Below, piece by piece: positions 11,161 through 58,127 of a DNA stretch of 64,000 bases. The DNA is from Macrostomum lignano (taxonomy: Eukaryota). The stretch is from positions 62,001 to 126,000 of the forward strand of contig NIVC01001270.1 of NCBI GenBank assembly GCA_002269645.1, in the 5' to 3' direction. The notes beneath the pieces are model-generated. The model saw only the letters and a list, made by a program, of their open reading frames with translations. It did no database searches and was not told where the DNA came from. The position numbers were made by a program, and so were the translations under genes. The stretch's first letter is position 1. Each line of letters starts with the position of its first letter.

Positions 11161-11624
11161 AGATTTGGATACTCATAATCTTGTATTTCCATGCATTTGA
11201 TTATCTTTACTTACTAGTGTTTGGTAAACAAATAAAAGTTAATGACTTCAAACTACTCCATCAATTGGAGCTTGTCTTTCCTTGACTAATGTAATCACAA
11301 TCAGCCAAAGTTGCTGAATGACTGACTTATTGCCGAAATTTAAGGATACAAGCAAATTCAAACACGCCAAGGGGGCTATAAATGTGTATTTTAATGTCTG
11401 CTATAAACATACGCAGATAAGATATTTTATTGTTCCGATGTGCTTGTTAGTTAAAAAATTTATTAGAGTATTAATACTTCTTGACAAAAAATTGATGATT
11501 AATAAGTTTTTCTGCTGTGTTGAATACTTTTCTACTACTAAGTCAATTGCCTTTAAACGAATTAGATAAATATCAGTTAATTAATTGCCGTTACCTTTGT
11601 AGTTCTTCATCGCTCCACAGATCT

Positions 11625-12800: not shown

Positions 12801-12857
12801 GAGGCCTCTGATTGGCGTCCAGTATCAGTTGTAAAAACGCGTCAGGGTCGTCTCTAT

Positions 12858-19269
<6,412 letters not shown>

Positions 19270-22048: not shown

Positions 22049-22561
22049 ATGCAGTCCAGCGAGCTGGTTGAGGCGACTAGCAAAGCGGCTACAGAACTGC
22101 CGGATCTGCCCAAAGGTGTCGTCAGCAGCGACTGTCCAGCCGCGGATCCGGCGGCCGCTGAATTCCCGGGCGTGCGAAATTTGATCAGAAAGTTTGACAG
22201 CTTGGGCGGCGGCAGCAGCGGGGCGTCGTCGGCCAGCGTTCGCGCCAAGTCGCCGTCGCAGCCACACTTCAAACGGTCAACGACGACGGTTTTAACAGCG
22301 GCCGCCAGAGCTCAGGAGGAGGCCGCGGTGTCGTCGCCATTAACGGAGGTCACTGCCGAGAGCTCAAAGCCACCGCTTGGAGAAGAAGACGCAAATTTGA
22401 ACACCAGCGACACCACAGCAGCCGAAGCCAAGAACGAGGAGGCTGACAATACAGCGACGGTGGCCGCCGCCGTGGACGAACCCGATGCCGAACAGTCGCC
22501 AAGTTGCGGCGGCGTCGGTGACATCGGTGGCGCGAATTTGCTCGAAGATGGCGGCAGCGGT

Positions 22562-22593
<32 letters not shown>

Positions 22594-24388: not shown

Positions 24389-25001
24389 GTTAACGAATTA
24401 ACTTGGCGTTCTTTATTGAGAAAATTGCCGTCTAGATGTTCCATTTTGATTAGATAATGAAAATTTTGACTGACTTTTCATGAGGACGCAACAATCTTGA
24501 CTGATCCCTGCATGCGTTCCGACTGTTGGTGAATGAGTTTCTTACGAATAAACCAAAGAAATTCTACAGCTCGGAGTGCCAACTCTTCCCAAACCTCTCA
24601 TTTATTCATACAAGTCTAGGCTGACCACAGTTCCTCAGTTTACACAAAAAAGGCGCGTTCTTTTATTTTACTAAATTGATCATAACTTCCGGGTTTGGTT
24701 GCATCTCGATTTCTGCAAGTTTAGTCTCGTTTTAAAACATGATGGTTAAATCCTTTTGTTATGTCTTCTTTTACACCGAAGAAAGACGGAAGATAGTGTT
24801 TGAGCGTTTGCGAGCTTATGCCACTCGAGAGCATAGCCGTTTCAGAAACTTAATATATTTCTTTGGCTCGCGAGCCGTCTCAAGCATTTAATACTGTACC
24901 GAGTATCTAGAGTTTCAACCCTAGACACTTTAGAAGCAGAAAGCAAACGAGGCCGAAGTCTATAAGAAGTCAGAAGTCACGTCACAACATCCCTCTTCCT
25001 T

Positions 25002-28727: not shown

Positions 28728-28826
28728 TGTTATGTCTTCTTTTACACCGAAGAAAGACGGAAGATAGTGTTTGAGCGTTTGCGAGCTTATGCCACTCGAG
28801 AGCATAGCCGTTTCAGAAACTTAATA

Positions 28827-30246
28827 TACCTTTTTACGTTCTATTTGATAAAAACTGCAACCAATTTGGCCACGGCTCAGCCTGACCATAGACATAGAAT
28901 TTTCCATAGACAGCCACCGCTAGCGGCAACCAATTTGGTAAAAACTGCGAGCTATTTTGCCAGCTTGAAGATAGCAGCTGCTCTGATGGCGAATCGTTGG
29001 CCGTACCAAAAAATAAGTCAGCTGGATCGAGAGCGAATCGTGAGAGCGTACAGGAGTGGCGACGACTGGGGAGAGCTTGGCAGAATGATGGGGATGAAGA
29101 AACCGACAGTGAGGAACATCGTGACCACGTATGAACGAACTGGTAGAGTTGGCACTCTGCCAAAAGGAGGAGTGAAGAGGATGGCGCTGACGGAGGCTAT
29201 GGTGGACACCATTGTTCAATTCGTCGAAGGTCAACCTACTGCGACGCTGCAACAAATGAGAGAGCACCTGCTGCACCAACACAATGACGTTGCCAACGTG
29301 AGTCTGACCACTATCAGTCGTGCTCTGGATGGTCGCCTCATCACCCTGAAGTTACTGCGCCAGGTACCTGTGAACTGGAACATGCCTGTTACAAAGGAGG
29401 CGCGAAGGATGCACGTTGAATGGATGCTGGACGAGGGAAGCCAGGTGAACACCATCTTCATGGACGAGTTTGGGGTGAACATCTGGACGGCGAGGACTCA
29501 AGGCCGCTCAGCGAAGGGGCTCCCAGCTGTGACTGTCGTCAGCGGACAGCGTGGGCAGAATCTCACCATCTGCCTGGCCATCTCGCAACTCGGCCTGATT
29601 CACAGCACTCTCGTCGAAGGAGGCTTTAAGAACGAGCACTTCATGGAATTCCTCTCTGAGATCGATGTTCTGATGGAAGAGGAGTTTGTGCTACTGTCCG
29701 ATGGGGCTCGCACTCACCTAGGTGTCCCTGGGATGTCTGAAGGTCATGCTCACCGATTCCTGCCTCCATACTCGCCGTTCATCAACCCGGCGGAGTACGC
29801 AGGCTCAGCGCTGAAGGCCAAGCTGAAAACGCAATTGCAATCACCTGCCATTCAGCTCGAGGTGGCAGATACTGGACTGGCTGCTGCAGCAGGTGCGACA
29901 TTGCATCAGCACAGGATGCGCATTCTGAAGAGAGAAGTGCAGCAAGCACTGAACTGCATCACGCCTCTCAAGTGCCTGCGCTGGATCAACCATTCCCAGA
30001 CGTACTTCAATCGGTGCTTGAATGCTGAGGACATAATGTTCTGACTTCGTGCATGTATTGTTAACATTCTTTATCGTTATTGTTATGCTATTGAGCTGCT
30101 ATCTTCAAGCTGGCAAAATAGCTCGCAGTTTTTACCAAATTGGTTGCCGCTAGCGGTGGCTGTCTATGGAAAATTCTATGTCTATGGTCAGGCTGAGCCG
30201 TGGCCAAATTGGTTGCAGTTTTTATCAAATAGAACGTAAAAAGGAA
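28827..30246 (+). mobile_element. IS630-Tc1-mariner superfamily DNA transposon (Gambol/IS630-like), 1420 bp, long TIRs
   Basis: 151-bp perfect inverted repeats at 28829-28979 and 30094-30244, plus terminal TA / AA dinucleotides. TA duplicated at 28825-28826 and 30247-30248. Removing the insert restores TTAATATATTTC as in the 3' LTR. Confidence 0.95.
28986..30044 (+). CDS. Intact transposase, 352 aa, DD30E triad
   Basis: N-terminal HTH region; catalytic DEFG ... SDGARTH ... LPPYSPFINPAE. RTQGRSAKG and QRGQNLTICLAIS are typical of IS630/Gambol-like enzymes. Confidence 0.92.
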   Translation: MANRWPYQKISQLDRERIVRAYRSGDDWGELGRMMGMKKPTVRNIVTTYERTGRVGTLPKGGVKRMALTEAMVDTIVQFVEGQPTATLQQMREHLLHQHNDVANVSLTTISRALDGRLITLKLLRQVPVNWNMPVTKEARRMHVEWMLDEGSQVNTIFMDEFGVNIWTARTQGRSAKGLPAVTVVSGQRGQNLTICLAISQLGLIHSTLVEGGFKNEHFMEFLSEIDVLMEEEFVLLSDGARTHLGVPGMSEGHAHRFLPPYSPFINPAEYAGSALKAKLKTQLQSPAIQLEVADTGLAAAAGATLHQHRMRILKREVQQALNCITPLKCLRWINHSQTYFNRCLNAEDIMF

Positions 30247-41917: not shown

Positions 41918-44900
41918 ATGTTCGATAACGGCAACCAGGACGTGTCTGCTGGAGGCAACTCGACTGATGCCGCCGCCGCTTCTGCTGCTGCTGCTGCTTC
42001 TAGCGACAGCAATGGCGCGATTGAGCGGAAGCGGGCCCGGAAACGGCGCTGGGGTGGCGATGATCAAGAGAAGATCCAAATTCCTGGTGAGGGTATTGAC
42101 TGTTTGTCATTGAAGCCACCATCTGTAATACCAAATTAGACATCTCAGATCCCATATTAGTCATCTCAGATCCCACATTAGACATCTCAGATCCCCATAT
42201 TAGGCATCTCAGATCCCATATTAGTCATCTCAGATCCCATATTAGACATCTCAAATCCTATATTAGACATCTCAGATCCCATATTAGTCATCTCAGATCC
42301 CCATATTAGACATCTCAGATCCCATATTAGTCATCTCAGATCCCATATTAGTCATCTCAGATCCCATATTAGTCATCTCAGATCCCATATTAGACATCTC
42401 AAATCCCCATATTAGACATCTCAGATCCCATATTAGTCATCTCTGATCCCCATATTAGACATCTCAGATCCCATATTAGTCATCTCAGATCCCATATTAG
42501 TCATCTCAGATCCAATATTAGACATCTCAGATCCCATATTAGACATCTCAGATAGATCCCCATATTAGACATCTCAGATCCCCATATTAGTCATCTCAGA
42601 TCCTATATTAGTCATCTCAGATCCCATATTAGTCATCTCAGATCCAATATTAGACATCTCAGATAGATCCCCATATTAGGCATATCAGATCCCCGGATTA
42701 GGGATCTCAGATCCCATATTAGGCATCTGCTGGTTAGGCAGCTGCGGCTGAGCTGTGGGTTACATATCTGCCCATTAGGTCAGGTGTAATATGAATTATA
42801 GTTATTAATTCTATTATTATTATTATTATCATTATTGTTATTAATATTATTACTATTATATTATGCTATTTTTCGCCCGCCCAGGCATGCCCACCATAGT
42901 CCCGTCGAACATGGACCCGGACAAGGAGAAGCAGTACATCAACCAGATCCAAATTGAGGACATCACTAGGAAGCTGCGGTCTGGCGATCTGGGCATACCG
43001 ACCGACCCGTCTAGGCGGAGCCCCAGCCCGGAGCCCATCTACGGCTCCGATGGCAAGCGGTTGAACACGCGCGAGTACAGGACCAAGCGTAAGATGGAGG
43101 AACTGCGCCACAAGCTCATACAGGAGGTGCTGGAGCTCAATCCGGATTATAAGCCGCCCAGCGACTACAAGCCGCCGACTGTGAAGGTCACGGAAAAGGT
43201 TCGGCACAGCTGTGATGTTCCTTTTTCCTACCTTGTGCTTCTTGTCTGCTGGATATGCCGATCCTTATGTCTCCTTACCCTCTCTCCTGTCTGTCCTCAT
43301 GTCTCATCTCACCCTCTCTCCTGTCTGTTCTCATGTCTCATCTCACCCTCTCTCCTGTCTGTTCTCATGTCTCATCTCCCCCTCTCTCCTTTCTTTTTTG
43401 ATGTCTCATCTCACCCTCTCTCCTGTCTGTCCTCATGTCTCCTCTCACCCTCTCTCCTGTCTGTCCTCATGTCTCATCTCCCCCTCTCTCCTTTCTGTTT
43501 TGATGTCTCATCTCACCCTCTCTCCTGTCTGTCCTCATGTCTCCTCTCACCCTCTCTCCTGTCTGTCCTCATGTCTCCTCTCCCCCTCTCTCCTGTCTGT
43601 CCTCATGTCTCATCTCACCCTCTCTCCTGTCTGTCCTCATGTCTCCTCTCCCCCTCTCTCCTGTCTGTCCTCATGTCTCATCTCACCATCTCTCCTGTCT
43701 GTCCTCATGTCTCCTCTCACCCTCTCTCCAAGTTTCTCTTCTCTTCATCATTCTACCAACCCTAGCACTGTCCGATGCCAATTAGCAGTTGCTTAGAGTA
43801 AACATAATGTTATAACCGCTGCAATTTGTCTTTAACCTCCACCTTCTGCCCAGATCTACATACCTCAGGAGGAGCACCCGGACGTGAATTTTGTGGGCCT
43901 AATCATTGGACCGCGCGGCAACACGCTGAAGAATCTCGAGCGCGAGACCAACTGCCGGATAATTATTCGGGGCAAAGGCAGCGTGAAAGAAGGTGAGGCC
44001 GCGCGTTTGGATTGTTCCTTGTCTTTATTAGATTTTAATTAATGGTTTTTGCCCTGTTAACTCATATGCTAACGATACTACTTTTTTCTCTCGTACAAGT
44101 AGCATTATAAACATTTTTGTTCGTCCAAAATTTAGGAAAAATTCGCGACGGCACAAAAATGCCCGGCGAAGACGACGATCTGCACGCGTACGTCACCTCG
44201 ATGTCTTCCGACAGTGTGCGCAATGCCATCGAAAAGATCCGGGCCATTATTAAGCAGGGTGAGTTGAGCTATCGCATTTTATAGACTTAGCACTTAAAAT
44301 AGGGCCTGATTTGACAGGCTAAGTTTAGAAGCTAGGGTGGATTTGATGGACTGAACACCTGAGATAGGGGTGGATTTGATAGAATGAACACCTGAAATAG
44401 TGGCGGATTTGATAGACTCAACATCTGAGGTAGGGGCGGATTTGATAGATTGAACGTCTGAGATAGGGGTGGATTTGATGGACTGAACACCTGAGATAGG
44501 GGTGGATTTGATAGAATGAACACCTGAGATAGGGGCGGATTTGATAGAATGAACACCTGAGATAGGGGCGGATTTGATAGATTGAACACCTGAGATAGTG
44601 GCGGATTTGATAGACTGAACACCTGAAATAGGGGCGGATTTGATAGATTGAACGTCTGAAATAGGGGCGGATTTGATAGACTGAACACCTGATATGGGGC
44701 GGATTTGATAGACTGAACACCTGATATGGGGCGGATTTGATAGACTGAACACCTGAAATAGGGGCGGATTTGATAGACTGAACACCTGATATGGGGCGGA
44801 TTTGATAGACTGAACACCTGAAATAGGGGCGGATTTGATAGATTGAACACCTGATGTGGGGCGGATTTGATAGACTGAACACCTGAGATAGGGGCGGATT

Positions 44901-46396
44901 TGATAGATTGAACACCTGATATGGGGCGGATTTGATAGACTGAACACCTGAGATAGGGGCGGATTTGATAGACTGAACAGCTGAGATAGGGGCGGATTTG
45001 ATAGACTGAACACCTGAGATAGGGGCGGATTTGATAGACTGAACACCTGAGATAGGGGCGGATTTGATAGACTGAACGTCTGAGATAAGGGCGGATTTGA
45101 TAGATTGAACGTCTGAGATAAGGGCGGATTTGATAGATTGAACGTCTGAGATAGGGGCGGATTTGATAGATTGAACGTCTGAGATAAGGGCGGATTTGAT
45201 AGATTGAACGTCTGAGATAAGGGCGGATTTGATAGATTGAACGTCTGAGATAAGGGCGGATTTGATAGACTGAACACCTGAGATAGGGGCGGATTTGATA
45301 GACTGAACGTCTGAGATAAGGGCGGATTTGATAGATTGAACGTCTGAAATAGGGGCGGATTTGATAGATTGAACGTCTGAAATAGGGGCGGATTTGATAG
45401 ATTGAACGTCTGAAATAGGGGCGGATTTGATAGATTAAACGTCTGAAATAGGGGCGGATTTGATGCACCAAGCAAGCAGTCATCCCCGGGGCGCCGCTCC
45501 GCTCATCCCCGCCCTCAGGCATCGAGCAGCCGGAGGAGAACAACGAACTGAGGCGGAAGCAGCTCCGCGAGCTGGCCCTGTTCAACGGCACCCTGCGCGA
45601 AGACGAAGGCCTGGCTAAACTGCGCCAGCTGGCCGAAGCCTCCGACATCATCACCAACCAGATTGTCTGCACCAACTGCGGCGGCGCCGGCCATCTCGCC
45701 AAGGATTGTCGGGCACCACGCGGCGGCGGCGGCAGCGATAACGCAGGCGGGCCTGGCAGCGGCGGCGGAGGCCCTGGCGCCCAACATCAGCAGAAGGAGA
45801 TGGACAGCGAGTACTCGGCTCTCATGCAGGAGCTCGGCGTCAGTACAGCCTCGTCCTCCACTGCTGCGTCAGCCAATTCAACGTACACCGCCGCGTCGGT
45901 AGCAACCAGCAGCTTCGGTGCTGGCGGCAGCGGCCCGGGGCCTCGGCGCTTTCCGGCGCCGACGCCGTCTGGCGGATTCTCCGCTTCTGGCGGGGGAGGG
46001 CCGCCGCCGCGCAACTTCGGCCCGCCGCAGGGCGGATACGGCAGGCCGTCCTACTATGGCGGACAGCCCCGGCCGCCTCTGGCCATTGCCGGGCCGCAGC
46101 ATCATCAGCAGCAGCATCATCAGCAGCAGCACCATCCAGGCTACGGAGCCGGTCCTGGTGGGCCGCGCAACTGGCACGGCCCGCCGTTTCAGCCCGGGAA
46201 CCGGCATCCGCCGCCTCCACCGCCGCCGCCGGGCTCGTCGGCCGGTCCGGCGTGGCGAGCGGCGCCGTCCCGGCCGCGCTTCCCGCCGCCGCGGCCTCCG
46301 TCGCAGTCCTGGCTGCCGCCTCCGCCAGGTGTCGGCGGCTACGGCGGCCACGGAATGCGACTGCCGCCGCCGCCGCCGCCGCCGCCCGGTTACTAA
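41918..46396 (+). CDS. SF1: Splicing factor 1 / branchpoint-binding protein; exons 41918-42086, 42885-43198, 43854-43992, 44136-44258, 45519-46396 (540 aa)
   Basis: ULM RKRRW; RSPSPEPIY; KH domain [15 protein letters not shown]...[11 protein letters not shown]; QUA2 [13 protein letters not shown]; knuckle [14 protein letters not shown]; Pro-rich tail. All four GT-AG introns keep the frame. Confidence 0.96.
42136..42722. repeat. 20-21-bp minisatellite, SF1 intron 1
   Basis: Tandem TAG(A/T)CATCTCAGATCCC(C)ATAT. Confidence 0.95.
42738..42860 (+). mobile_element. SINE family A 3' fragment with (TAT)n tail
   Basis: GCAGCTGCGGCTGAGCTGTGGGTTACATATCTGCCCATT...CAGGTG matches 16487-16536 and is followed by a TAT-repeat tail. 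Confidence 0.65.
43270..43732. repeat. ~32-34-bp CT-rich minisatellite, SF1 intron 2
   Basis: Tandem TCTCCTGTCTGTCCTCATGTCTCATCTCACCCTC variants. Confidence 0.92.
44330..45465. repeat. 33-bp minisatellite, SF1 intron 4
   Basis: About 34 copies of GAACACCTGAGATAGGGGCGGATTTGATAGACT variants. Confidence 0.96.
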
Positions 46397-47211
46397 GAAG
46401 AACACAACACATCCCTGATGTTGCTGTTGTTTCCTTTTCCTGGCTCTCGCTTTTTATGTCGTTAATTTTCATTGATGAGCTACAAGTACTACTACTGCAC
46501 TGAGTAGAGTATGCTGCAAAATATTTAAATGCATAGGCAGTTTTTTATTGTACGCGTGCCCCGTTTTGCTTGCATTATTTGATAATAATATTATGTAGCT
46601 TAAATGTAAAATATGTCTATTGTAATTGAGTAAATTTTGTGTTTAGATGTGCGCGTGTTTTTTTAACTGGCGATTCGGGTTTAGTCTCTGTGCTGCTCCT
46701 CCGGGTGTCACCGTTGCAATATGCAGCCAAGTTAATTACTCATTACTAGCAGTTCCAGTTGGACATGTGAAAGCAAGTTATTGATAATGTGAACTTTTTG
46801 TCTGCATATGAAATCATAATATATCTTAAAAGCGTCGTCACGATATAAAAATCTGTAAGTCTTGCGAATATGCCTTTGGTAGTTACGTCACTCCGCTGAC
46901 CCAAATCAAAGAAGAATTTACAATGCGCATTAAACAACTTGATGATGCAAATTGAAATTCGCCAAGCGAACTTCGCTTCTCTCGACTGCTATCTACATGA
47001 TCCAAAGTAGCATCTTGGATAAGGTTACGAGTAATTGCTAATACAGTACAGGTCTTAAGTGTGACTTCCTGTTGCCAGTTGCCATGCGGGCACACCTTGC
47101 GGTAATTGCTGGCCCTATATTTAAACAGGCAAGTATTGCAGCTTGGCTCTGCATTGCGCTGAGAGTTAAACAGCTTTCTTGCAGTGCGAATTCTTGACAC
47201 AGACAGCTCAG

Positions 47212-49421
47212 ATGGAGCCCAACACCAATCCCGAGCAGCTGTACGACAATGCCGAGGAGATCAGCAAGTGCCGCTGTCGCCTGCTAGTGCTGCCGCTGCT
47301 GCAGTGTTTCGTCACTTGCCTGTTTGTTGTCGGGCTGGAGTGCAGCGTAGGTTGGACTTGGCTGAGACCCTCGGCTGCGAGCCGGCAGGCGAGTCATTCA
47401 AGTGTTGCCTTAGCTCAATGGGGAGTTGCTGAGGCTCAATGGGGAGTTGCTGAGGCTCAATGGGGAGTTGCTGAGGCTCAATAGGGAGTTGCTGTGGTTC
47501 AATGGGGAGTTGCTGTGGTTCAATAGGGAGTTGCTGTGGTTCAATAGGGAGTTGCTGTGGTTCAATAAGGAGTTGCTGAGGTTCAATAGGGAGTTGCTGA
47601 GGTTCAATGGGGAATTGCTGAGGTTTAATAGGGAGTTGCTGAGGCTCAATGGGGAGTTGCTGAGGTTTAATAGGGAGTTGCTGAGGCTCAATGGGGAGTT
47701 GCTGAGGTTCAATGGCTCAATGGGGAGTTGCTGTGGTTCAATGGCTCAATGGGGAGTTGCTGAGATTTAATAGGGAGTTGCTGAGGTTCAATGGGGAGTT
47801 GCTGAGATTTAATAGGGAGTTGCTGAGGTTCAATGGGGAGTTGCTGTGGTTTAATGGGGAGTTGCTGAGGTTCAGTGGGGAGTTGCTGTGGTTCAGTGGG
47901 GAGTTGCTGTGGTTCAATGACTCAATGGGGAGTTGCTGTGGTTTAATGGGGAGTTGCTGAGGTTCAGTGGGGAGTTGCTGTGGTTCAGTGGGGAGTTGCT
48001 GTGGTTCAATGACTCAATGGGGAGTTGCTGAGGTTCAATTGCAGTGGATAGTGGAATCTCGGCTTGGGTCTGTTCGTGCAATTACGAGCTTTGAGGGCCT
48101 TGTGGGCCAACCCCTAATTGGCATAGTAAAGTGTACATGCCTAACGATAAATAAAGTTAGAGCCGCTGTACACTCCTGTGTGAGTGTGCCTGTCCTATGA
48201 ATGTGTACACATGTACGTTTCCGCGCGCTTCTGCTCAGGTGAGCTGACAGAAGGGTAATGCCTCTCGCCGGTTGTGCGACAAATGTCGCTAAAAGTGCAA
48301 AAAGGCACGGTGCACACAGCCCGTGGCTGTAACTAAAAACTAAATGGCTCAATGGGGAGTTGCTGCTGAGACGGCAAGGCTTAAGCGGAAGTTTTGAAAT
48401 GTCATGGCTGAAGATGGGCTTCTGAGTTGTCGTGGCAAGAAGGACCAGCGTATTCGATCAGTAGTTTGAGAATTTTCAGAGTAAATTTAAAATGGAGTGT
48501 AAGAGCATGCGTGTAAATTAATATTTACACGCTATCTACACTATAAGTGCGCTAAACACCCTCATTGCTCGCAGGACCTAATCAGTCTTGTCGTGCTGCC
48601 CTGCCCTAACAGCGCGAGCGGCCAGCTGTACTCCTGCCCGGACGGTTCCGACTGCCGTCTGCCGCTGGGCGAGCGACTCGACTCGAGCTTGGGTCCCTCG
48701 TATCGACTGGAGCAAAACAGTTCTGTACGAGTTCTGCTGAGCGGGAGCTTCCGCATCACCGCTCAAGTGAATGCCAATGTTCTGTGTATATGGACTAGAT
48801 TAGCAATCCATTGTATTGCTTCCTGTTTGTAGGATATAGATTAGCAATCCATTGTATTGCCTCCTGTTTGTAGGCTATAGATTAGCAATCCATTGTATTG
48901 CCTCCTGTTTGTAGGATATAGATTAGCAATCCATTGTATTGCTTCCTGTTTGTAGGATATAGATTAGCAATCCATTGTATTGCCTCCTGTTTGTAGGCTA
49001 TAGATTAGCTTAGCAATCCATTGTATTGCTTCCTGTTTGTAGGATATAGATTAGCAAATTCCCAGAGAGATTAGATATCCCTTTACCGTCGAAATCGATT
49101 GACCATTCGTTCAAATTTCTTTTTCTACGATACCGATTAGCAGTAAGCGCAGTGCAAAAATATTCCCAATCTTCACCATCTCACTCGCAGATAGCGTGTC
49201 ACACCACATGTAATAATACAGCTTGTGGCAACATGAGCGCTTCCATTGAGCTGCATAACAACAGGAATCTCCGGTGCTTCAAGAACAACAGCAAGTACCA
49301 GTTCTGCAACTTCTACGAGCTGCTTGATCTGTCAGCCAATGACAAGGTCAGCTTTCGCAGCAACTGCCAAGTGGCCTGCGCCAAGCACATGACCAGCATG
49401 TCGATTGAACGAATCAGCTGA
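47212..49421 (+). CDS. Putative type II membrane protein with a divergent TNF/C1q-like domain; exons 47212-47388, 48575-48766, 49191-49421 (199 aa)
   Basis: Hydrophobic segment LLVLPLLQCFVTCLFVVGL. LEQNSSVRVLLSGSFRITAQ|IAC follows the TNF pattern L-x-N-x-L-x-V-x3-G-x-Y-x-I-x-SQV. LLDLSANDKVSF follows the (F/L)-x-L-x2-GD-x-(L/I)-S pattern. Needs a GC-AG intron 1 (CAG|GCGAGT) and a GT-AG intron 2, both phase 0. Confidence 0.6.
47410..48038. repeat. 21-bp minisatellite
   Basis: Tandem CAATGGGGAGTTGCTG(A/T)GGTT; one more unit resumes after the SINE at ~48343. Confidence 0.95.
48045..48342 (+). mobile_element. SINE family B copy, 5'-truncated, inserted into the 21-bp array
   Basis: GGAATCTCGGCTTGG...GTGTACATGCCTAACGATAAATAAAGTTAG...CCGGTTGTG aligns with 31948-32186. 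Confidence 0.8.
48796..49058. repeat. 41-bp minisatellite
   Basis: About 6 copies of TAGATTAGCAATCCATTGTATTGCTTCCTGTTTGTAGGATA. Confidence 0.95.
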
Positions 49422-50363
49422 GGAAGAGTCTTAGATAACGAGCTATGCGACGGACTGGATCTCAGATCTTAACTAAAGTACTGGATGAGCCACTCGATAA
49501 ATGTATCTGATTTTTTAACCTATTTTCGATCGCAGATACTAGAATAACTAGTTATGTATGTCGAAAAAATGCGCTTGTCTACTCTTTTTCAGTAGTAAAA
49601 TTAGCGTTTTTTAAAAGCGGACTTCTAGGAATGCCTCAGACTCGAAATTATTTACAAAGAAATGAATTATGAATTTAAGATTGAAGATTTCAGGAAAACT
49701 TGAAAAACCCAAATCCAGTTTGTGTGTATAGAGAAACGGGGTTGGTGCCCCAGCCAGGCCGATAAAAATTTTGGCTTTCCTCTTGCCAACTTTGCTTGAC
49801 TTTGACTTCTGACTCTGACTTCTCTCTTTACAGCTCTCTCATTGGCTGAGCGAGATTGGGCCTGTCTTTCCCTAGTCTCAGTTTCGTCCATCTAACTCTG
49901 ATCTCTCTACTTACTGCTCTCTCATTGGCTGAGCTGGATTGGGTGCTTACTTGTGTACATCGAGTTAAATGCCTATTGTTGATTCCTAACCCCCATATTC
50001 TTTGAGGTCATAAACTAGGAAGGAAAGGAGATTTTAGCTGCCACATTAAATTTAAGTGGCGCTGCGCAGACAAACTACTGAAAAATAGTAGACGCTGTAC
50101 TTTTTCACAACTTTACTTGCGAGTGACATATCCATTAGTTATTGCATCTGTGCTTTCTATTGAACACCATATGATTTTTTTGCGGTAACTCGTCAGATCT
50201 GTGGGCTTTGACCATAGACAAAATGCTCGGAGCCAATAAAAACTGGGAGAGGGTGGCCCAAATATAGTGCTTTAGTATTCGTAGTTCATCAAATTTACAA
50301 TACTAATTTAACCCAAATTCGACTTGTATTCACGAACTAGCGTGCTCGACTTTTAATCCCAGA

Positions 50364-51585
50364 CAGTGGTGGGAGTGAGGAGTGCCCATTTTTTTCGCGC
50401 CTACGATTTTTTTTCGCGCCGCAAGTTTTTTTGTGTCAATCTTTTTTGCCATACATTGACTAAATAATGTTCAAAAGAGTAACTCTGATCGAAAAAAACG
50501 ATTGTTGTGTTGTTGCAACAGCTTGACTATAATTTAACATCGTAGTCGTAGACAATAGTGCGCCACTCGCACTCGTGGGTCTCGTGTATTGCATTTTATT
50601 AGGTCTTACTTAGGTCTTACTTAGGAATTATTTAAATGAAAGTTATTGAATTGCTAAAGATTAAATTCGAAATAATCGTAACTTGCATTTGTTATAATTC
50701 AAGCTAGACTAAATCTAATATATGAAATCGAAAGCTATATACGAGAGCGTATCTAACTTTGGAAGATGTAATTTTAAGCAAGTAAAAGGCAACTAACATA
50801 GCATTAGCCTAAAAAAACATTACGACTAATTGTTCAATATTGTCATTGTCACGCTGTTGTTATCCAGAGCGGAACTTTTTCTGTTGAACGCTTTCTGGCA
50901 GAGGGTTCGACAATGACTGCTCAATAGCTCGACGCTTGAGCACCGTCTCAGTGATTTTGTCGGCCTGTTTCAGCTTCTTCTTCTGCAGCTTGTCTTGTCT
51001 GTGTCGCAGGTCGTCCAGCTCACGATCTCGGTCCTCCTTCGCCTTAGTCATTTCCAGCAACAGCTTCTGAGCGTCATCCCTCTGCTTCTGCTTCTTCTTT
51101 ATATGCTCGTTAGTCTCCAGAACAGAATTTTCTAAGTCTGTGAATGTCTTGCTTGCGCTTTTCTCGTTTCGAATTTCGGAGAGGACACTCTTCTCGAGCT
51201 CTTCCCTCTTCTTGCGCTCCTCTTCTTGCTTCTCTTCTTCCAGCCGTCGGCGGTACGCAGCATAGGCGCTGTTGCACAGGTTCCGCAACCTAAGCGAGAC
51301 TGGTAGCGTAGCAGCTGTCCAACATTTAGCAGCAAGGCAAGAGCGCGCGACGAGTTTCAGCATAACACAAGTTTATTTAAACAACAATAAGTTTACAAGT
51401 GAAAGTACAGCTGTAGGAGACACTGGGGGTGTGGCAGTCACTGGCAAAGTAAAGCAAAATCAGCTCACTTTTTTCGCGCATTGAGCATAAAAAAAAATCG
51501 CGCCTCGCCTCACAAATCGCGCATTCGCGCCATTAATCCCGAAATTCGCGCCAGGCGCGAATTCGCGCCTCACTCCCACCACTTG
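50364..51585 (-). mobile_element. Internally deleted TIR element (hAT-like) retaining a coiled-coil terminal exon
   Basis: Inverted ends AGTGGTGGGAGTGAGG / CCTCACTCCCACCACT and multiple TTCGCGC subterminal motifs at both ends. Minus ORF 50860-51300 (LRNLCNSAYAAYRRRLEEEKQEEERKKR) resembles transposase C-terminal tails. TSD ambiguous. Confidence 0.5.
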
Positions 51586-51612
51586 GTCTGGGATTCCCAG
51601 ACTAATTATTTA

Positions 51613-53085
51613 CACCTTTTTCAGTTCAATTTCAACAAAACTCGCATTCAATTTCGGCAAGCTGACATTCAATTTCGGCAATTGGATATTATATTTCATA
51701 CTATAGTAAGGGCGCTAATTTGTCTATGGACAAAACTTGCTCCTGCATGCCGATTTCTCATTCAATTTCGGGATTCTGCATTCAATTTCAACATGAAGGT
51801 CCGAGAGCAGAGGCAGAAGCGGCTTTATGAGTTGCGCCAGACATGGACACAATCCTGTCCTTTCTCATGCGCGTCAAGAAGGTGGGTTCTGTCACGTTAT
51901 TGGCGTAGAGGCTATGACCCTTAGAAGGGCCGTTTTACGAGAGTTGTCGTAAGTCGTAGTCCCAAAATGAATTGAAGTCAATTCTTGCAAAGCGGATTGT
52001 GTAGCGGAGCACTTAGCGTATAAGGGCAGGAAACTGCCGTAGTTAATTTATTGTTGAGATCAGTATTCAAACTGGTTAATGTCAATACAGAACTTATTGC
52101 GCTTTGGGACACTGGCGGCTGCAACAATGGTTTTGAAGGTAGTTAGAATATGAAGTCGAGTGGCAGGCGAAGGATACAATGGCGACGCAACGTAGTGAGT
52201 GATGTCGATGAGCACAGTGAAGGCAGTGAGCAGTAAGTAAACAGGCAGATAAGTAACGGTGAGAGTGGCGTTAGCCGTGGCAGTACACAGTGGAGTACAG
52301 AGTGTGAACAGGCTGGCCCAGACAGAGGAGCCGTGGCGAGAGATAAGGAGGCTCGAGGCAGCCAAGAGAGAGAAGGAAAACGAGAGCCAGACGCCCGAAG
52401 CCAGAAGTGAGGAGGCGAGGGTAGGGAGGCGCCCAGCCCGCCGCCAGACGGGGGGTTAATAAAGAGCGCAGAGGGCTAGCAATATACACGCGGAGAGTTT
52501 TCATTGGCTGGCGAGAGAACTTGAAATTATCGATCGTGGTAAAATTTACAGACGAACGCGAGTCCTACCAAATACACAGTGAATTAGCAATTGATACAGA
52601 TTATTTGCACGCTACTACAAGTAAACGTTAAAATAAACTATTAGAGAAATTAAAATGAGAAATTACAAGGGAAACTATAGTCCAACGGCCCTTTTGCGGG
52701 ACCACTTAAACTAGCAACGTCACAGTTCTGTCTCCGTCAGACATCTGTCCGTAATGGACCCCAGGGTTCAACCCCATCATCTTCGTCACCGATTTTTTCT
52801 TCATCTCCCGCTTCTTCAAACATCACCTCGTCGCTCATTCTTCTGATTTGTACGGTAATATCTTAAATGAATTGAGTGTATGCTCCCGTACATGAAACAA
52901 AATTGTCTTCTGGAAGCGAATTTGAAGGAGAGCACTAAGTTTAAAGAGGGATGCAATAGAGAGCCTCAAACAGTTACAGCCTTAAATGCAGCATGCCGAA
53001 ATTGAATGACGGTTGAAATAGGTAAATACATGTATAGAATAATGAAATAGAATGTGAGTTTTGTTGAAGTTGAACGGAAAAGGTG
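51613..53085 (-). mobile_element. Deleted, decayed Gambol-like transposon interrupted by a solo LTR
   Basis: TIRs CACCTTTTTCAGTTCAATTTCAACAAAACTCGCATT vs (reverse complement) CACCTTTTCCGTTCAACTTCAACAAAACTCACATT; left flank TA. Removing the LTR restores YGQMSDGDRTHLLDAHEKGQD, similar to YQKISQLDRERIVRAYRSGDD in the intact transposase. Confidence 0.75.
51890..52724 (-). mobile_element. Solo LTR, 835 bp
   Basis: Ends TGTCACGT...ACGTCACA; 4-bp TSD GTTC at 51886-51889 and 52725-52728. Minus-strand CCAAT (~52507) and AATAAA (~52028) suggest the orientation. Confidence 0.8.
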
Positions 53086-53639
53086 TCATTGAGTGTCGTT
53101 TGACACCTCAGCTAATACGGATTGTCTTTGGAAAAATGAATGGACTAATTCAATGACCGATTGTATTGCCATTTTGTGCAACATTTTGCGGTGTTTTCTC
53201 AATGTATGCGTGTCCCGCGTCCTGGAAGCGTTACACTACCGGCCCTCGCAGCATCCTCGCCATTCTAGCATTCATCATTGTGATTTACCTCGACGTCTGC
53301 ATTACTCAAATTAGCAGCTTGAGGCACAATGCAAGGCAGGTAGGCAAGCCAAGCACAGCGAGCGCTTCTTGCTTTGACAAATTAAAATGACAGACGAGCC
53401 GGTCAACAGCAATGCTAGGCTCTAATCAAAATAAATAGCCAGTGCTGAGATGGCCGCTGCTGCTGCATTATGCAGGACAACAATAAGTAATTCCCAGCTT
53501 TGCTGTTCGGGCCTAGCGGTGAAGAAACTCATCAAGAAAAAAGCCAATTTTTGCTTTGGCCTTGATTCTTTAAGCGGTTCCTTCTGAGCAGTTCAGAGTG
53601 ATCAGTTCGATTCACTCCCATGAGGACCATGCAACCGCC

Positions 53640-53790
53640 AAGGCACAGACAGTGTACATGCTTGACGATTAGAAAGTCAGGGCTGCTGTACACCCTGAGT
53701 GCGTGCCTAAGTGCAGCATTGGAGCGCGGTGCTCAGGAGTCAGCGGAATGGGTAGAGGGTAGAATTGCCTCAGCGCTGGTGTACATGGGA
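53640..53790 (+). mobile_element. SINE family B core fragment
   Basis: GTGTACATGCTTGACGATTAGAAAGTCAGGGCTGCTGTACACCCTG...GCTCAGGAGTCAGCGGAATGGG. Confidence 0.7.
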
Positions 53791-53898
53791 TGATGTCGCC
53801 GAAGAGCTGTTCCCAATGACAATTGAGCTTTTCATTGAGGCCTTCGGACATTTTCAAGAAATTTCCATCTATTATGCTGAACTTATCAGATACGTACA

Positions 53899-55584
53899 CA
53901 GGGGCGTCGCCAACGTGGGGACAGGGAGGATATATGTCCCCTCCCAGTGAAAGATCTGGGGGGACATGCGAATGCTTTGTCCCCCTCCCACCCCACCTTG
54001 TGACCCCTTCTGGAAATCAATAATTTTTTTGCAGGGCGCCAAAATAGAGTGCCTGCGGCGCTAAAATGAGTGCCTGCGGCGCTAAAATGAGTGCCTGCGG
54101 CGCTAAAATGAGTTGCCTGCGGCGTTAAAATGAGTGCCTGCGGCGGCAAAATGAGTGCCTGCGGCGCTAAAATGAGTGCGTGTGGCGCTAAAATGAGTGC
54201 CTGCGGCGCTAAAATAAGTGCCTGCGGCGCTAAAATGAGTGCCTGTGGCGCTAAAATGAGTTGCCTGTGGCGTTAAAATGAGTGCCTGTGGCGCTAAAAT
54301 GAGTGCCTGCGGCGCTAAAATGAGTGCGTGTGGCGCTAAAATGAGTGCCTGCGGCGCTAAAATAAGTGCCTGCGGCGCTAAAATGAGTTGCCTGCGGCGT
54401 TAAAATGAGTGCCTGCGGCGGCAAAATGAGTGCCTGCGGCGCTAAAATGAGTGCGTGTGGCGCTAAAATGAGTGCCTGCGGCGCTAAAATGAGTGCCTGC
54501 GGCGGCAAAATGAGTGCCTGCGGCGCTAAAATGAGTTCCTGTGGCGCTCAAATGAGTGCCTGTGGCGCTCAAATGCATGAGTACCTGCGGCGCTAAAATG
54601 AGTGCCTATGGTGCTCAAATGCATGAGTGCCTGCGGCGCTAAAATGAGTGCGTGTGGCGCTAAAATGAGTGCCTGCGGCGCTAAAATAAGTGCCTGCGGC
54701 GCTAAAATGAGTTGCCTGCGGCGTTAAAATGAGTGCCTGCGGCGGCAAAATGAGTGCCTGCGGCGCTAAAATGAGTGCGTGTGGCGCTAAAATGAGTGCC
54801 TGCGGCGCTAAAATGAGTGCCTGCGGCGCTAAAATGAGTGCCTGTGGCGCTAAAATGAGTTGCCTGTGGCGTTAAAATGAGTGCCTGTGGCGCTAAAATG
54901 AGTGCCTGCGGCGCTAAAATAAGTGCCTGCGGCGCTAAAATGAGTGCCTGCGGCGCTAAAATGAGTGCCTGCGGCGGCAAAATGAGTGCCTGTGGCGCTA
55001 AAATGAGTGCCTGCGGCGCTAAAATGAGTGCGTGTGGCGCTAAAATGAGTGCCTGCGGCGCTAAAATGAGTGCCTGCGGCGCTAAAATGAGTGCCTGCGG
55101 CGCTAAAATGAGTGCCTGCGGCGCTAAAATGAGTGCCTGCGGCGCTAAAATGAGTGCCTGCGGCGCTAAAATGAGTTGCCTGCGGCGTTAAAATGAGTGC
55201 CTGCGGCGCTAAAATGAGTGCGTGTGGCGCTAAAATGAGTGCCTGCGGCGCTAAAATGAGTGCCTGCGGCGCTAAAATGAGTGCCTGCGGCGCTAAAATG
55301 AGTGCCTGCGGCGCTAAAATGAGTGCGTGTGGCGCTAAAATGAGTTGCCTGCGGCGTTAAAATGAGTGCCTGCGGCGCCAAAATGAGTGCGTGTGGCGCT
55401 AAAATGAGTGCCTGCGGCGCTAAAATGAGTGCCTGCGGCGCTAAAATGAGTGCGTGTGGCGCTAAAATGAGCGCTGACAACACCGATTCTGAAATAATGT
55501 ACATGTAGGAATTTAGTCAAGTACATGTACAAGTATAATTGTTGGCTCTGCCCCACCACCATAAAATCTATGGCGACGCCCCTG
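53899..55584. mobile_element. hAT-type MITE swollen by an internal tandem array
   Basis: Perfect 14-bp TIRs CAGGGGCGTCGCCA / TGGCGACGCCCCTG. Flanks TACGTACA and CATGTATA (5/8, only C/T transitions) look like a decayed 8-bp TSD. Confidence 0.75.
54040..55476. repeat. 21-bp minisatellite inside the MITE
   Basis: More than 60 copies of CCTGCGGCGCTAAAATGAGTG variants. Confidence 0.97.
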
Positions 55585-56298: not shown

Positions 56299-58127
56299 TT
56301 AGCTCAGAGACAGTTCCTCCAGCGGTACAGCAGTCGGTGGCGGCGGTTGCGGCAGCAGCGGCAGAGTCGCGATCAGCCTTCCCTGCCGCTGTCGGTCGCC
56401 TCCATCGTCCGGGTGGTCACTGGCGGCCTCATCGCCCTGATGTCGCTGCCGGTGCCACCGCATTGTCGACTGGCCCCGACGTTGTCGTCTCAGCAGTCGG
56501 CGACCCCGCTGCCGGTGGCCGTCGCCGGGACCAAGTTGGACGCAGCCGAGACTCGCGACAGTGTCGTAGATTGCTGAGCGCAGTGCCATGCGGAACTTGG
56601 CGGACATTAGGCTGTACAATACCGGATTAGCGATGGAAGAGGCAAAGTACAGCAGCCCGGAGACCAGGTAAAGCGTCTGATTGACGGCTGTCACCAGGCA
56701 GCTCTGGCAGTAGGACTCTCGCTGCACCAGGTCGCCAAGAATGCGCGATAGATGAAACGGAGCGTAGCAGAAGAAGAATGCGAGCACGAGAGCGGCTGCA
56801 AGGCGAGGGTTGGCGTCGAAGTCAAAATTACAAGCTGTTTTAAAAATTGCAGGACATCGTCCCGCCACTAGCGCTAAGGTAAATTTGCCCGATTCGCTGG
56901 CTCCTGTCACTCCTGAGCACAATATAAGACACGGATAATGTACGCAGGTACGCACGCACTATTACGAGGTACCCGCTCACACAGGGTGTACATCGGCCCT
57001 TTGACTTTCTAATCGTCAGGCATGTACACTCTCTGTGCCTTGGGGGTTTGGCCCCCAAGCCCCATGAACCGCATGACAAGTGTTAGATTAAAAGAGGTCA
57101 AGCACGGAATGCAACCCAGGGATCAAGGCGTGAGGGTCGGGCGCATTTACTGTTCCCCCGACTCAAATAAAGAGGACTTTCTGGTCCATCTTCAGGGTTC
57201 GCTAGGGCTGAGGATTAACGAGTAACCCATGGGATTCCGTGCAAATACGTCCATTTGCTGACAATGAAATGCAATGAAATGCTCATGAAAGCAGGGAGAT
57301 CCTTCACCTAGCAGCTTGACAAGCGCGCGGCGACCCTTGCTAGGGCCGCTAGCGGGTCTCTCCTGGTCGGCGGCGCCGGCAGTCCGGTAGCGTCGGCCCA
57401 GCAAGCGCGGGTAGCGTCGCAACGAGCCCTGCACAGCGGCGCCAATGCGCAGGTACATGTACAGCATCAGCAGCATCGGCAGTCCGAACAGCAGCACGGA
57501 GGAGGCCAGGAACGAGTACGGTATTCGTCGAGTTTCTACTACGTCGCAGAGTCGAGATTCAACCAGCGGCTTAGCCGAGTAGCCCGTGCTCGAGTCGTTG
57601 CGCAGCAGCACCTCCACGCCAAGCTGCGTGGTCATGGCGGCGGACAGGCAGACCGAGGCAAGCCAGAGCAGGGCGATGGACCGGCCGATGCCGATTCCGG
57701 CTGGCGTAGGCCGACAGATCGCCAGGTAGCGCTGAGTTGTCAAGGCCAGTAGCGTCAGTGCTGAGCAGCTGGTGCAGGCCTCGGCCAGGAAGCCCGAGCT
57801 GGCGCACAGCAGGCCGCTACCTGGGAACGGGTAGCGCCTCCAGTGCGAGTAGATCTCGTAGGGCAGCCGGGCAATGAGCACTAGCAGATCGGAGACGCTC
57901 AGGCTCATTAAATAGAAGTTTGTTGCCGTGTGCAAGTACCTGGTGCGAGCTATCACGGCGCAGATTGCTAGGTTTCCAACGCCGCCAACTAACAGTATGG
58001 TTGCCATGACAACAGTGTAGGCTACCAATTTGCCCGATCCGTAGGCAGTTGGCGGACCCCACTGCAGTTCTATACATTTGACGTCGCTGATGTTGTAATG
58101 ACAACTGACGTGCACAAAGGATATCAT
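56299..58127 (-). CDS. Class A neuropeptide GPCR, neuromedin U / PRXamide receptor-like; exons 58127-57308 and 56795-56299 (438 aa)
   Basis: GNLAIC, HTATNFYLMSLSVSDLL, QRYLAIC, FGLPM, CYAPFH, SGLLYFASSIANPVLYSLMSAKFR. A phase-1 GT-AG intron joins VKLL-A-ALVLAFF. Confidence 0.88.
56950..57065 (-). mobile_element. SINE family B core fragment in the GPCR intron
   Basis: Reverse complement GGCACAGAGAGTGTACATGCCTGACGATTAGAAAGTCAAAGGGCCGATGTACACCCTGTGTGAG. Confidence 0.75.

What the first reader, a model, noticed from the sequence alone, without database searches (positions are those of the whole stretch)
47212..49421. Hidden TNF/C1q-fold type II membrane gene that needs a GC-AG intron
Seen: three short GC-rich exons, separated by repeat-filled introns, join in phase 0 to give 199 aa. 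The protein has a short N-terminal tail, one hydrophobic helix, a stalk and a Cys-rich beta-strand domain. The only nearby donor that preserves the frame is CAG|GCGAGT at 47389, a strong match to the GC-AG consensus. The nearer GT at 47351 leads to a stop in exon 2. Established: type II topology plus L-x-N-x-L-x-V-x3-G-x-Y-x-I-x-SQV and L-x-L-x2-GD-x-L-S strands is the TNF-ligand pattern. Inference: a very divergent, disulfide-rich invertebrate TNF-like cytokine that automated annotation would likely fragment.
Basis: partly seen in the sequence, partly recalled or inferred. Interest (0 to 1): 0.7.

Follow-up and report, generated by a model that had tools for sequence, protein, structure and literature searches.

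The report
Unannotated divergent TNF-like flatworm gene
The window comes from the flatworm Macrostomum lignano and holds a small three-exon gene, missing from the deposited annotation, that probably encodes a very divergent membrane-anchored TNF-family signalling protein, a protein family already known in this animal.

Summary
The window is Macrostomum lignano (assembly GCA_002269645.1, contig NIVC01001270.1). The three exons (47212-47388, 48575-48766, 49191-49421, + strand) exist as described. They join in phase 0 to 199 aa and show coding-type codon bias. The splice sites are strong, and the introns are filled with minisatellites. No gene is called here in the deposited annotation.

Standard searches find nothing: Pfam, PDB sequences, a word-index search and an exhaustive phmmer of 1.84 billion proteins. 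Single-sequence AlphaFold fails (pLDDT 30-38).

A profile of the published Macrostomum/Microdalyellia TNF ligands (PMC7519573) does align with residues 106-199. It runs from TNF strand C to the exact C-terminus at 12.9 bits. None of 20,000 shuffles reaches that score. Exons 3 and 2 are the two best hits among all 359 six-frame stretches of the window. In a PDB scan, all 60 best hits down to 13.0 bits are TNF-family ligands.

True flatworm TNFs score 60-160 bits when held out, so this is a far outlier. The fold is unverified.

The GC donor at 47389 is the best donor. It is not strictly required: a weak in-frame GT donor at 47347 was missed.

Verdict: a probable new, highly divergent member of a known family. 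Interest is moderate to low.

The parts
47116..47125 (+). TATA-like element TATATTTAAA, 87-96 nt upstream of the ATG (possible promoter; weak evidence)
   Evidence: Sequence read directly. No functional test.
47174..47184 (+). Strong acceptor-like site CTTTCTTGCAG, ending 27 nt upstream of the ATG. Possibly a spliced-leader trans-splice acceptor or the 3' end of a 5'UTR intron.
   Evidence: 38.8% of M. lignano genes are trans-spliced (PMC5730564). Its use here is inferred.
47212..47388 (+). Exon 1 (59 codons): 23-aa N-terminal tail, hydrophobic signal-anchor segment (residues ~24-44, nt 47281-47343), 15-aa stalk
   Evidence: GC3 is 0.78, and frame +0 has the best codon score of the six frames.
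47347..47352 (+). Alternative weak in-frame GT donor AGC|GTAGGT. Its use would delete the 14-aa stalk and give a 185-aa product.
47389..48574 (+). Intron 1 (1186 nt) with GC donor CAG|GCGAGT and acceptor CATTGCTCGCAG|G. Contains the 21-bp minisatellite at 47415-48039.
   Evidence: The donor flank score of 8.2 bits is the best of all in-frame GT/GC sites. The intron is 1417 nt in the duplicate locus L004, 231 nt longer, which equals eleven 21-bp units.
48575..48766 (+). Exon 2 (64 codons, residues 60-123): N-terminal half of the ectodomain up to the G-S-F-R-I-T-A-Q strand (TNF strand C)
   Evidence: Second-best hit of the flatworm TNF profile among 359 six-frame stretches of the window.
48767..49190 (+). 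Intron 2 (424 nt), GT-AG (CAA|GTGAAT ... CACTCGCAG|A). Contains the 41-bp minisatellite at 48796-49057.
   Evidence: The intron is 301 nt in L004, 123 nt shorter, which equals three 41-bp units.
49191..49421 (+). Exon 3 (76 codons plus TGA, residues 124-199): C-terminal half of the ectodomain, with Cys152/Cys162, the L-S-A-N-D-K-V-S-F motif and the terminal strand
   Evidence: Best hit of the flatworm TNF profile among 359 six-frame stretches of the window.

Best explanation
This is an unannotated three-exon protein-coding gene of Macrostomum lignano. It lies 816 bp downstream of the splicing factor 1 gene (SF1) on the same strand.

It encodes a 199-aa single-pass membrane protein with a short cytoplasmic N-terminus, a signal-anchor helix, a ~15-aa stalk and a ~140-aa extracellular domain. 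That domain is N-glycosylatable and holds ten cysteines.

The ectodomain is most likely a very divergent TNF homology domain, paralogous to the TNF-superfamily ligands already described in Macrostomum.

By inference from the family, it would fold as a beta jelly-roll and assemble as a homotrimer at the cell surface, possibly shed by cleavage in the stalk. It would signal by clustering a cysteine-rich TNFR-type receptor. The two cysteines shared with the flatworm TNFs (Cys152, Cys162) probably form the strand E-F disulfide typical of the EDA/BAFF/APRIL branch.

Intron 1 is most likely removed as a GC-AG intron.

Shown here: the ORF structure, the codon bias, the splice-site quality and the profile similarity. 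Inferred: transcription, topology, fold, trimerisation and receptor binding.
For: Organism and locus:
- The SF1 protein of the window is 100% identical to BOX15_Mlig024025g1 of M. lignano.
- The window region tested (42000-53000) matches L003 (NIVC01001270.1) at 100%.

Gene reality:
- The exons join in frame.
- GC3 is 0.70-0.78 against 0.38-0.49 GC outside the exons.
- The proposed frame is the best of six in all three exons. Exons 1 and 2 exceed the maximum of 100 non-coding control windows.
- Both acceptors are the best local AGs and share the CTCGCAG motif.
- The GC donor matches the donor consensus at every other position.

TNF relationship:
- Profile A1 was built from eight published flatworm TNF ligands. 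It is itself valid: 6 of 8 members hit Pfam TNF, and its PDB hits are APRIL, EDA, BAFF, RANKL and Eiger.
- The candidate scores 12.9 bits against A1. The alignment is colinear from profile position 71 to 175 of 176 and from residue 106 to the last residue.
- None of 20,000 composition-matched shuffles reaches that score (maximum 12.2). The reversed sequence scores 8.8.
- hhalign gives P=0.0024 over 86 columns. One of 400 shuffles reaches it.
- The result holds when each subfamily is left out in turn: 9.3-13.7 bits, with 0-1 of 3000 shuffles reaching it.
- Exons 3 and 2, scored separately, are the two top hits among all 359 six-frame stretches of the window.
- In a scan of 177,635 PDB sequences, all 60 best hits down to 13.0 bits are TNF-superfamily ligands.
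- Seven of 13 invariant family columns are kept (P100, G116, C152, C162, D174, V176, T191), plus Y to F at 118.
- Size (199 aa), the N-terminal membrane anchor and the stalk length resemble the known M. lignano ligands of 213-288 aa.
- The low-confidence AlphaFold model is all-beta with nine strands.
Against: - No transcript evidence was available.
- The deposited annotation is transcriptome-guided (PMC5730564) and calls nothing here. It also misses the conserved 167-aa neighbour gene.
- Pfam TNF gives no hit at E<=10.
- PDB sequences, the word-index search and the exhaustive phmmer of 1.84 billion representatives found no relative.
- Pairwise BLAST and phmmer against the flatworm TNFs are not significant.
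- Held-out genuine flatworm TNFs score 60-160 bits against 9-14 for the candidate.
- The invariant RR pair, the Gly of the G-D motif and one conserved Cys with its loop are absent.
- The N-terminal half of the ectodomain matches only marginally: 580 of 20,000 shuffles reach its score.
- AlphaFold gave pLDDT 30 and 38, and Foldseek found nothing with E<0.5.
- The duplicate locus is too similar to test for selection. It shows 0 exon differences where 2.6 are expected, P=0.07.
Confidence: 0.6

Rival explanations
1. It is a real, expressed gene for a lineage-specific cysteine-rich type II membrane or secreted protein with no evolutionary link to TNF ligands. The 13-bit profile match would then reflect beta-strand periodicity plus a few cysteines.
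For: - No hit in Pfam or PDB and no homologue in 1.84 billion representative proteins.
- The score is 5-10 times lower than that of any held-out true member.
- Several invariant residues are missing.
- The N-terminal half matches only at p about 0.03.
- The fold is unverified.
Against: - None of 20,000 shuffles reaches the score.
- The 60 hits listed in the PDB scan, down to 13.0 bits, are all TNF ligands.
- The alignment is colinear, ends exactly at both C-termini and pairs both conserved cysteines.
- The two exons independently rank first and second in the window.
Confidence: 0.2
2. It is not a functional gene. It would be a silent or decaying duplicate (pseudogene) or a chance set of open frames, which would explain its absence from a transcriptome-guided annotation.
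For: - No gene is called in either assembly copy.
- No identical or similar predicted protein exists in the 15-billion-protein collection.
- No canonical AATAAA or ATTAAA lies within 620 nt of the stop.
- The comparison between the duplicates has no power.
Against: - The 600-nt ORF across three exons is intact. The splice sites are the best locally and an ATG follows a strong acceptor.
- Codon bias is specific to the proposed frame.
- Both copies are intact and identical.
- The same annotation also misses the clearly conserved 167-aa neighbour, so absence from it is weak evidence.
Confidence: 0.15
3. The gene is real, but intron 1 uses the GT donor at 47347 (AGC|GTAGGT) instead of the GC donor. 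The product would be 185 aa with almost no stalk, so the GC-AG intron is not needed.
For: The GT at 47347 is in phase 0 and gives an intact ORF. GT donors are about 99% of metazoan donors (established knowledge).
Against: - Its flank score is -1.0 bits against 8.2 for the GC site, and its exon side (AGC) is poor.
- The GC site has the otherwise perfect consensus typical of GC-AG introns (established knowledge).
- The 14 residues it would remove form a stalk of the length seen in known M. lignano TNF ligands: about 13 aa between the anchor and the I-H-L-V-I-D strand.
Confidence: 0.25
4. It is a C1q-domain (gC1q) protein and not a TNF ligand.
For: gC1q and TNF domains share one fold, and both have a hydrophobic-x-L-x-x-G-D-x-V type strand (established knowledge).
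Against: - Pfam C1q gives no hit at E<=10.
- There is no signal peptide followed by a collagen-like G-x-y stalk in the sequence.
- The only profile that matches is a TNF-ligand profile, and its PDB hits are all TNF ligands with no C1q chains.
Confidence: 0.02

Closest known systems
Macrostomum/Microdalyellia TNF-superfamily ligands (Bertevello et al. 2020, PMC7519573; e.g. BOX15_Mlig009154g1, 216 aa)
   Same: - Same species and genus.
- Small type II layout with an N-terminal membrane anchor and a short stalk.
- Cysteine-rich C-terminal domain that ends at the protein's C-terminus.
- Shared L-P-C, L-G-P, G-x-[YF]-R-I-x-x-Q-[VI], two aligned Cys, D-x-V and T-x-x-x-I-x-R-[IL]-S elements.
- 22-27% identity over about 120 aligned positions.
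   Different: - Scores only 9-14 bits against the family profile, where true members score 60-160.
- No Pfam TNF hit.
- Lacks the invariant RR pair, the Gly of G-D and the L-G-P-x-x-C...C loop.
- Has an extra C-x3-C-x4-C insertion after strand C and a C-x3-C before the last strand.
- Not in the published list and not annotated.
Vertebrate EDA / BAFF / APRIL branch of the TNF superfamily and Drosophila Eiger
   Same: These are the best solved-structure matches of the flatworm TNF profile. They share the type II ligand architecture. An E-F strand disulfide is characteristic of this branch (own knowledge), and the candidate keeps both aligned cysteines.
   Different: There is no direct sequence match between the candidate and any PDB TNF ligand. 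The link is only transitive, through the flatworm profile.
gC1q-domain proteins (C1q/TNF structural superfamily)
   Same: They would share the jelly-roll fold if the TNF assignment is right.
   Different: No Pfam C1q hit, no secretory signal peptide and no collagen-like stalk. The candidate has a membrane anchor instead.

Membership tests
TNF ligand superfamily (TNFSF) | Type II single-pass membrane topology with the homology domain at the extreme C-terminus | tested here: met
   - One hydrophobic segment at residues ~24-44 after a 23-aa hydrophilic tail.
- K19, R21 and R23 flank it on the N-side.
- All 10 ectodomain Cys and all 4 N-x-S/T sequons are C-terminal to it.
- The profile match ends at the last residue.
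This is a prediction only. The positive-inside contrast is weak (3 against 2 K/R).
TNF ligand superfamily (TNFSF) | Match to the curated TNF homology-domain model (Pfam PF00229) | tested here: not met
   No Pfam family at E<=10. Two of the eight accepted flatworm TNF-like sequences also miss PF00229 at E<=0.01, so this is a diagnostic, not a necessary feature.
TNF ligand superfamily (TNFSF) | Significant profile similarity to bona fide members over the homology domain | tested here: met
   - 12.9 bits against the flatworm TNF profile, reached by 0 of 20,000 shuffles.
- hhalign P=0.0024.
- Robust when each subfamily is left out.
- Exons 3 and 2 rank first and second of 359 window stretches.
- All 60 best PDB hits of the profile, down to 13.0 bits, are TNF ligands.
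The match is weak in absolute terms: E would be about 0.6 in a PDB-sized database.
TNF ligand superfamily (TNFSF) | Conserved family residues (flatworm clade invariants) | tested here: inconclusive
   Seven of 13 invariant columns are identical and one is conservative (Y to F). The RR pair, the Gly of G-D, one Cys and one Val are not kept. Fourteen of 31 columns conserved in at least 6 of 8 members are identical.
TNF ligand superfamily (TNFSF) | Ten-strand beta jelly-roll fold | tested here: inconclusive
   Single-sequence AlphaFold2 gave pLDDT 30.4 (full length) and 38.3 (ectodomain). The ectodomain model is all-beta with 9 strands. Foldseek against PDB found nothing at E<0.5. GITRL chains appear at ranks 7-9, 13 and 18, but not significantly.
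TNF ligand superfamily (TNFSF) | Homotrimer formation and binding to a cysteine-rich TNFR-family receptor | not testable with these tools
   Needs a multimer prediction with a real alignment, or biochemistry.
TNF ligand superfamily (TNFSF) | The gene is transcribed and spliced as modelled | not testable with these tools
   No M. lignano RNA-seq was reachable. No gene is called in GCA_002269645.1 at this site.
C1q-domain family | gC1q domain (Pfam PF00386) preceded by a signal peptide and a collagen-like G-x-y region | tested here: not met
   No Pfam hit at E<=10. The translated sequence has no G-x-y repeats and has an internal anchor instead of a cleavable signal peptide.
GC-AG (U2-type) introns | GC at +1/+2 with an otherwise near-perfect donor consensus, and a normal polypyrimidine/AG acceptor | tested here: met
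   CAG|GCGAGT matches the consensus at -3 to -1 and +3 to +6 (8.2 bits on a rough weight matrix built from memory of metazoan donor frequencies). The acceptor is CATTGCTCGCAG|G. Actual use was not tested. A weak in-frame GT alternative lies at 47347.

The most novel reading that the evidence does not exclude
The gene founds a separate, fast-evolving, extra-disulfide-bonded branch of TNF-like ligands in macrostomid flatworms. This branch would have lost the family's RR and G-D signatures and one conserved loop, and so lies beyond Pfam detection. It might use a different receptor, or act as a decoy or modulator of the canonical Macrostomum TNF/TNFR pair. More such hidden ligands would then be expected in flatworm genomes, including lineages thought to lack endogenous TNF ligands.
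Probability: 0.25. Interest if true: 0.55.

Novelty: new member of a known kind. Interest (0 to 1): 0.35.

Why it matters
TNF/TNFR signalling in flatworms is debated. Parasitic species keep a TNFR but have no detectable ligand. Free-living Macrostomum has canonical ligands (PMC7519573).

A ligand-like gene that escapes Pfam, BLAST and a transcriptome-guided annotation shows that 'no ligand found' can be a limit of detection. It also adds a candidate to the ligand set of a regeneration model organism.

In practice it flags that the deposited M. lignano annotation misses small genes with repeat-filled introns. Two adjacent examples lie in this window.

The GC-AG intron itself is ordinary.

Tried and rejected
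1. Pfam on the 199-aa product at E<=10 gave nothing.
2. PDB sequence search gave only two chance hits at E about 0.6-0.7.
3. Word-index search of 5.8 billion clusters gave nothing.
4. Exhaustive phmmer of 1.84 billion representatives gave two hits to long repeat proteins (a bacterial repeat protein and an RCC1-like repeat protein). Both were multi-stretch and I judged them spurious.
5. AlphaFold2 without an alignment, on the full length and on the ectodomain, gave pLDDT 30 and 38. Foldseek on the better model found nothing significant.
6. I looked for an orthologous locus through the neighbouring 167-aa gene. The only homologue (44% identity) sits on two short metagenome contigs, and I saw no exon-3-like ORF on the longer one, L001; L002 was not read.
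7. The duplicate locus L004 is 99.6-100% identical in unique sequence, so it gives no test of selection.
8. tblastn of the product against the window and the loci found no tandem paralogue.
9. Pairwise BLAST and phmmer against the published flatworm TNFs were not significant. Only the profile comparison is.
10. A profile of the N-terminal half alone was marginal, p about 0.03.
11. I considered the Drosophila/insect origin that the codon bias suggested. The SF1 match to M. lignano rejects it.
12. I did not fetch the genomic loci of the known M. lignano TNF genes to compare intron positions.
Full report
**Source of the window.** The ORFs around the finding include a splicing factor 1 (SF1) gene at about 42.9-46.4 kb on the + strand (Pfam SF1-HH). 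Its assembled protein is 100% identical to BOX15_Mlig024025g1 of the free-living flatworm Macrostomum lignano. The next best hits, from molluscs and flukes, are about 60% identical. That protein is encoded on two contigs of assembly GCA_002269645.1 (Mlig_3_7). L003 (NIVC01001270.1) matches the part of the window tested, 42000-53000, at 100%. L004 (NIVC01001275.1) is a near-identical duplicate. This fits the known redundancy of the assembly, which has 180 Mb of duplicated blocks, with tandem and simple repeats at 15% of the genome and LTR elements at 21% (PMC5730564).

**The observation.**
- Donor 1 is CAG|GCGAGT and donor 2 is CAA|GTGAAT.
- The two acceptors (CATTGCTCGCAG|G and TCTCACTCGCAG|A) are the best local AG sites and resemble each other.
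- Intron 1 contains about 28 copies of a 21-bp unit. Intron 2 contains 6.3 copies of a 41-bp unit.
- Such minisatellites are everywhere in this window, with at least 14 arrays. They are a property of the genome and not of this gene.
- GC3 is 0.70-0.78 in the exons, against 0.38-0.49 GC in introns and flanks.
- I trained a codon table on other coding sequence of the window. The proposed frame scores best of the six frames in each exon. Exons 1 and 2 exceed the best-of-six-frames maximum of 100 non-coding control windows.
- An ATG follows a strong acceptor-like site (CTTTCTTGCAG) by 27 nt. This could be a spliced-leader acceptor, since 38.8% of M. lignano genes are trans-spliced.

One claim is wrong. 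The GC donor is not the only frame-preserving donor. AGC|GTAGGT at 47347 is a GT donor in phase 0 and gives an intact 185-aa product. It is much weaker, with a flank score of -1.0 against 8.2 bits on a rough donor weight matrix that I built from memory of metazoan consensus frequencies. It would also remove the whole stalk. I therefore still favour the GC donor, at about 0.7. The gene does not strictly need it.

**The product.** It has a 23-aa hydrophilic tail and one hydrophobic segment at about residues 24-44, preceded by K19, R21 and R23. A stalk of about 15 aa follows, then a 140-aa region with ten Cys and four N-x-S/T sequons. A signal-anchor (type II) orientation is the natural reading. 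It remains a prediction.

**Standard homology and fold tests failed.**
- Pfam gave no family at E<=10.
- PDB sequences gave nothing.
- The word-index search gave nothing.
- The exhaustive phmmer scan of 1.84 billion representatives gave only two spurious multi-stretch hits to repeat proteins.
- AlphaFold2 without an alignment gave pLDDT 30.4 (full length) and 38.3 (ectodomain). The second model is all-beta with nine strands.
- Foldseek against PDB gave nothing below E=0.5. GITRL chains, which are TNF ligands, appear at ranks 7-9, 13 and 18, but a model this poor carries no weight.

**The literature lead.** Bertevello et al. 2020 (PMC7519573) report canonical TNF ligands in M. lignano, M. tuba and Microdalyellia and give their sequences. 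They are small type II proteins of 170-316 aa with cysteine-rich homology domains. The candidate is not among them.

I aligned eight of their homology domains as A1. The profile is a genuine TNF profile:
- Six of eight members hit Pfam PF00229.
- All its significant PDB hits are APRIL, EDA, BAFF, RANKL and Eiger.

**The candidate against the A1 profile.**
- hhalign aligns candidate residues 109-198 to the part of the profile running from strand C to the C-terminus (86 columns, P=0.0024). One of 400 shuffles reaches that score.
- hmmsearch gives 12.9 bits, profile positions 71-175 of 176 against residues 106-199 of 199. None of 20,000 composition-matched shuffles reaches it (maximum 12.2). The reversed sequence scores 8.8.
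- The score holds when any one subfamily is left out of the profile: 9.3-13.7 bits, with 0-1 of 3000 shuffles reaching it.
- I scanned every six-frame stop-to-stop stretch of at least 60 aa in the whole window (359 of them), together with the proteins fetched earlier (482 sequences in all). The top two hits are the stretches holding exon 3 (49050-49418) and exon 2 (48503-48829), scored independently.
- As a control on real proteins, the same profile was run against 177,635 distinct PDB sequences at E<=10. It returns 71 hits, of which the best 60 are listed. All 60, down to 13.0 bits, are TNF-superfamily ligands. They include human TNF, LT-alpha and GITRL at 13.0-13.8 bits. The candidate thus scores like a true but distant member, at a level where none of the 60 listed hits is an unrelated protein.
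- A MAFFT alignment is colinear over the whole ectodomain:
  - L-I-S-L-V-V with I-H-L-V-I-D;
  - L-P-C and L-G-P;
  - S-G-S-F-R-I-T-A-Q-I with P-G-I-Y-R-I-Y-G-Q-V;
  - Cys152 and Cys162 with the two invariant cysteines;
  - N-D-K-V-S with G-D-R-V-S;
  - T-S-M-S-I-E-R-I-S with T-F-W-G-M-V-R-M-A at the very end.
- Identity is 22-27% over about 120 positions. Seven of 13 invariant columns are kept.

**Limits of this evidence.**
- Held-out genuine flatworm TNFs score 60-160 bits, including one from a different order at 60 bits. The candidate is a far outlier.
- Pairwise comparisons are not significant.
- The invariant RR pair, the Gly of G-D and a conserved Cys loop are absent.
- The N-terminal half of the ectodomain matches only marginally, with 580 of 20,000 shuffles reaching its score.
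- No expression data could be reached. The deposited annotation is transcriptome-guided and calls no gene here in either duplicate.
- That absence is weak evidence. The same annotation also misses the neighbouring 167-aa ORF (50860-51363, - strand), which has a 44%-identical homologue elsewhere (E=3e-25).
- The duplicate locus cannot test for selection. The exons are identical, but so are the two unique intron segments. Zero exon differences where 2.6 are expected gives P=0.07.

**Verdict.** Most likely (about 0.6) this is a real, unannotated gene for a very divergent TNF-superfamily-like type II ligand, paralogous to the known Macrostomum TNF ligands, with intron 1 removed as a GC-AG intron. 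The rivals are:
- a lineage-specific cysteine-rich membrane protein with only a chance resemblance (about 0.2);
- a silent or decaying locus (about 0.15);
- a C1q assignment, which has no support.

I rate it a new, strongly divergent member of a known kind, of moderate to low interest. The practical lesson is that small genes with repeat-filled introns are missed in this annotation.

The Ty3/gypsy-type element in the window was only scanned against Pfam and was not assembled or printed.

Noticed in passing
window 50860-51363 (-): A 167-aa coiled-coil ORF lies tail-to-tail with the candidate. It has a 44%-identical 173-aa homologue (E=3e-25) on two ENA metagenome contigs. No gene is called there in GCA_002269645.1, and it has no Pfam family. 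It is probably a second unannotated conserved gene.
   Followed up: partly
window 47415-48039 and 48796-49057; L004 15456-16872 and 17065-17365: The intronic minisatellites differ in length between the two assembly duplicates. Intron 1 is 1186 against 1417 nt, a gain of 231 nt that equals eleven 21-bp units. Intron 2 is 424 against 301 nt, a loss of 123 nt that equals three 41-bp units. Exons and unique intron sequence are identical.
   Followed up: yes
whole window (e.g. 1022-1446, 5702-6525, 7176-7762, 11621-12799, 14372-15241, 23332-24041, 42131-42728, 43262-43729, 44335-45464, 54035-55471): At least 14 long minisatellite arrays (period 18-53 bp, 13-68 copies) occur, several of them inside SF1 introns. 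They create long spurious ORFs, such as 11581-12861 with meaningless Pfam hits.
   Followed up: partly
window 25002-28805 (-) and 28470-30044 (+): An intact 1267-aa gag-protease-RT-RNaseH-integrase ORF of a Ty3/gypsy-type LTR element is overlapped at its 5' end, on the other strand, by a 524-aa Tc1/mariner-type (DDE_3) transposase ORF. Both were only scanned against Pfam. Neither was assembled or printed.
   Followed up: no
L004 18640 onward and 21318-24457 (-): Homology between the two duplicates stops at window 50465 (L004 18640), within the window stretch compared (46000-55000). About 2.7 kb further on, L004 carries a 1959-aa retroelement pol-type ORF. No equivalent was looked for at that position in the window.
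   Followed up: no
window 56299-56955 and 57192-58127 (-): Two exons of a rhodopsin-family GPCR (Pfam 7tm_1) lie here. The gene lies partly beyond the stretch whose annotation was inspected.
   Followed up: no
window 8488-11160 (+): An 890-aa uninterrupted ORF carries a DUF1604 domain (E=1.4e-28). It is probably a single-exon or large-exon conserved gene.
   Followed up: no
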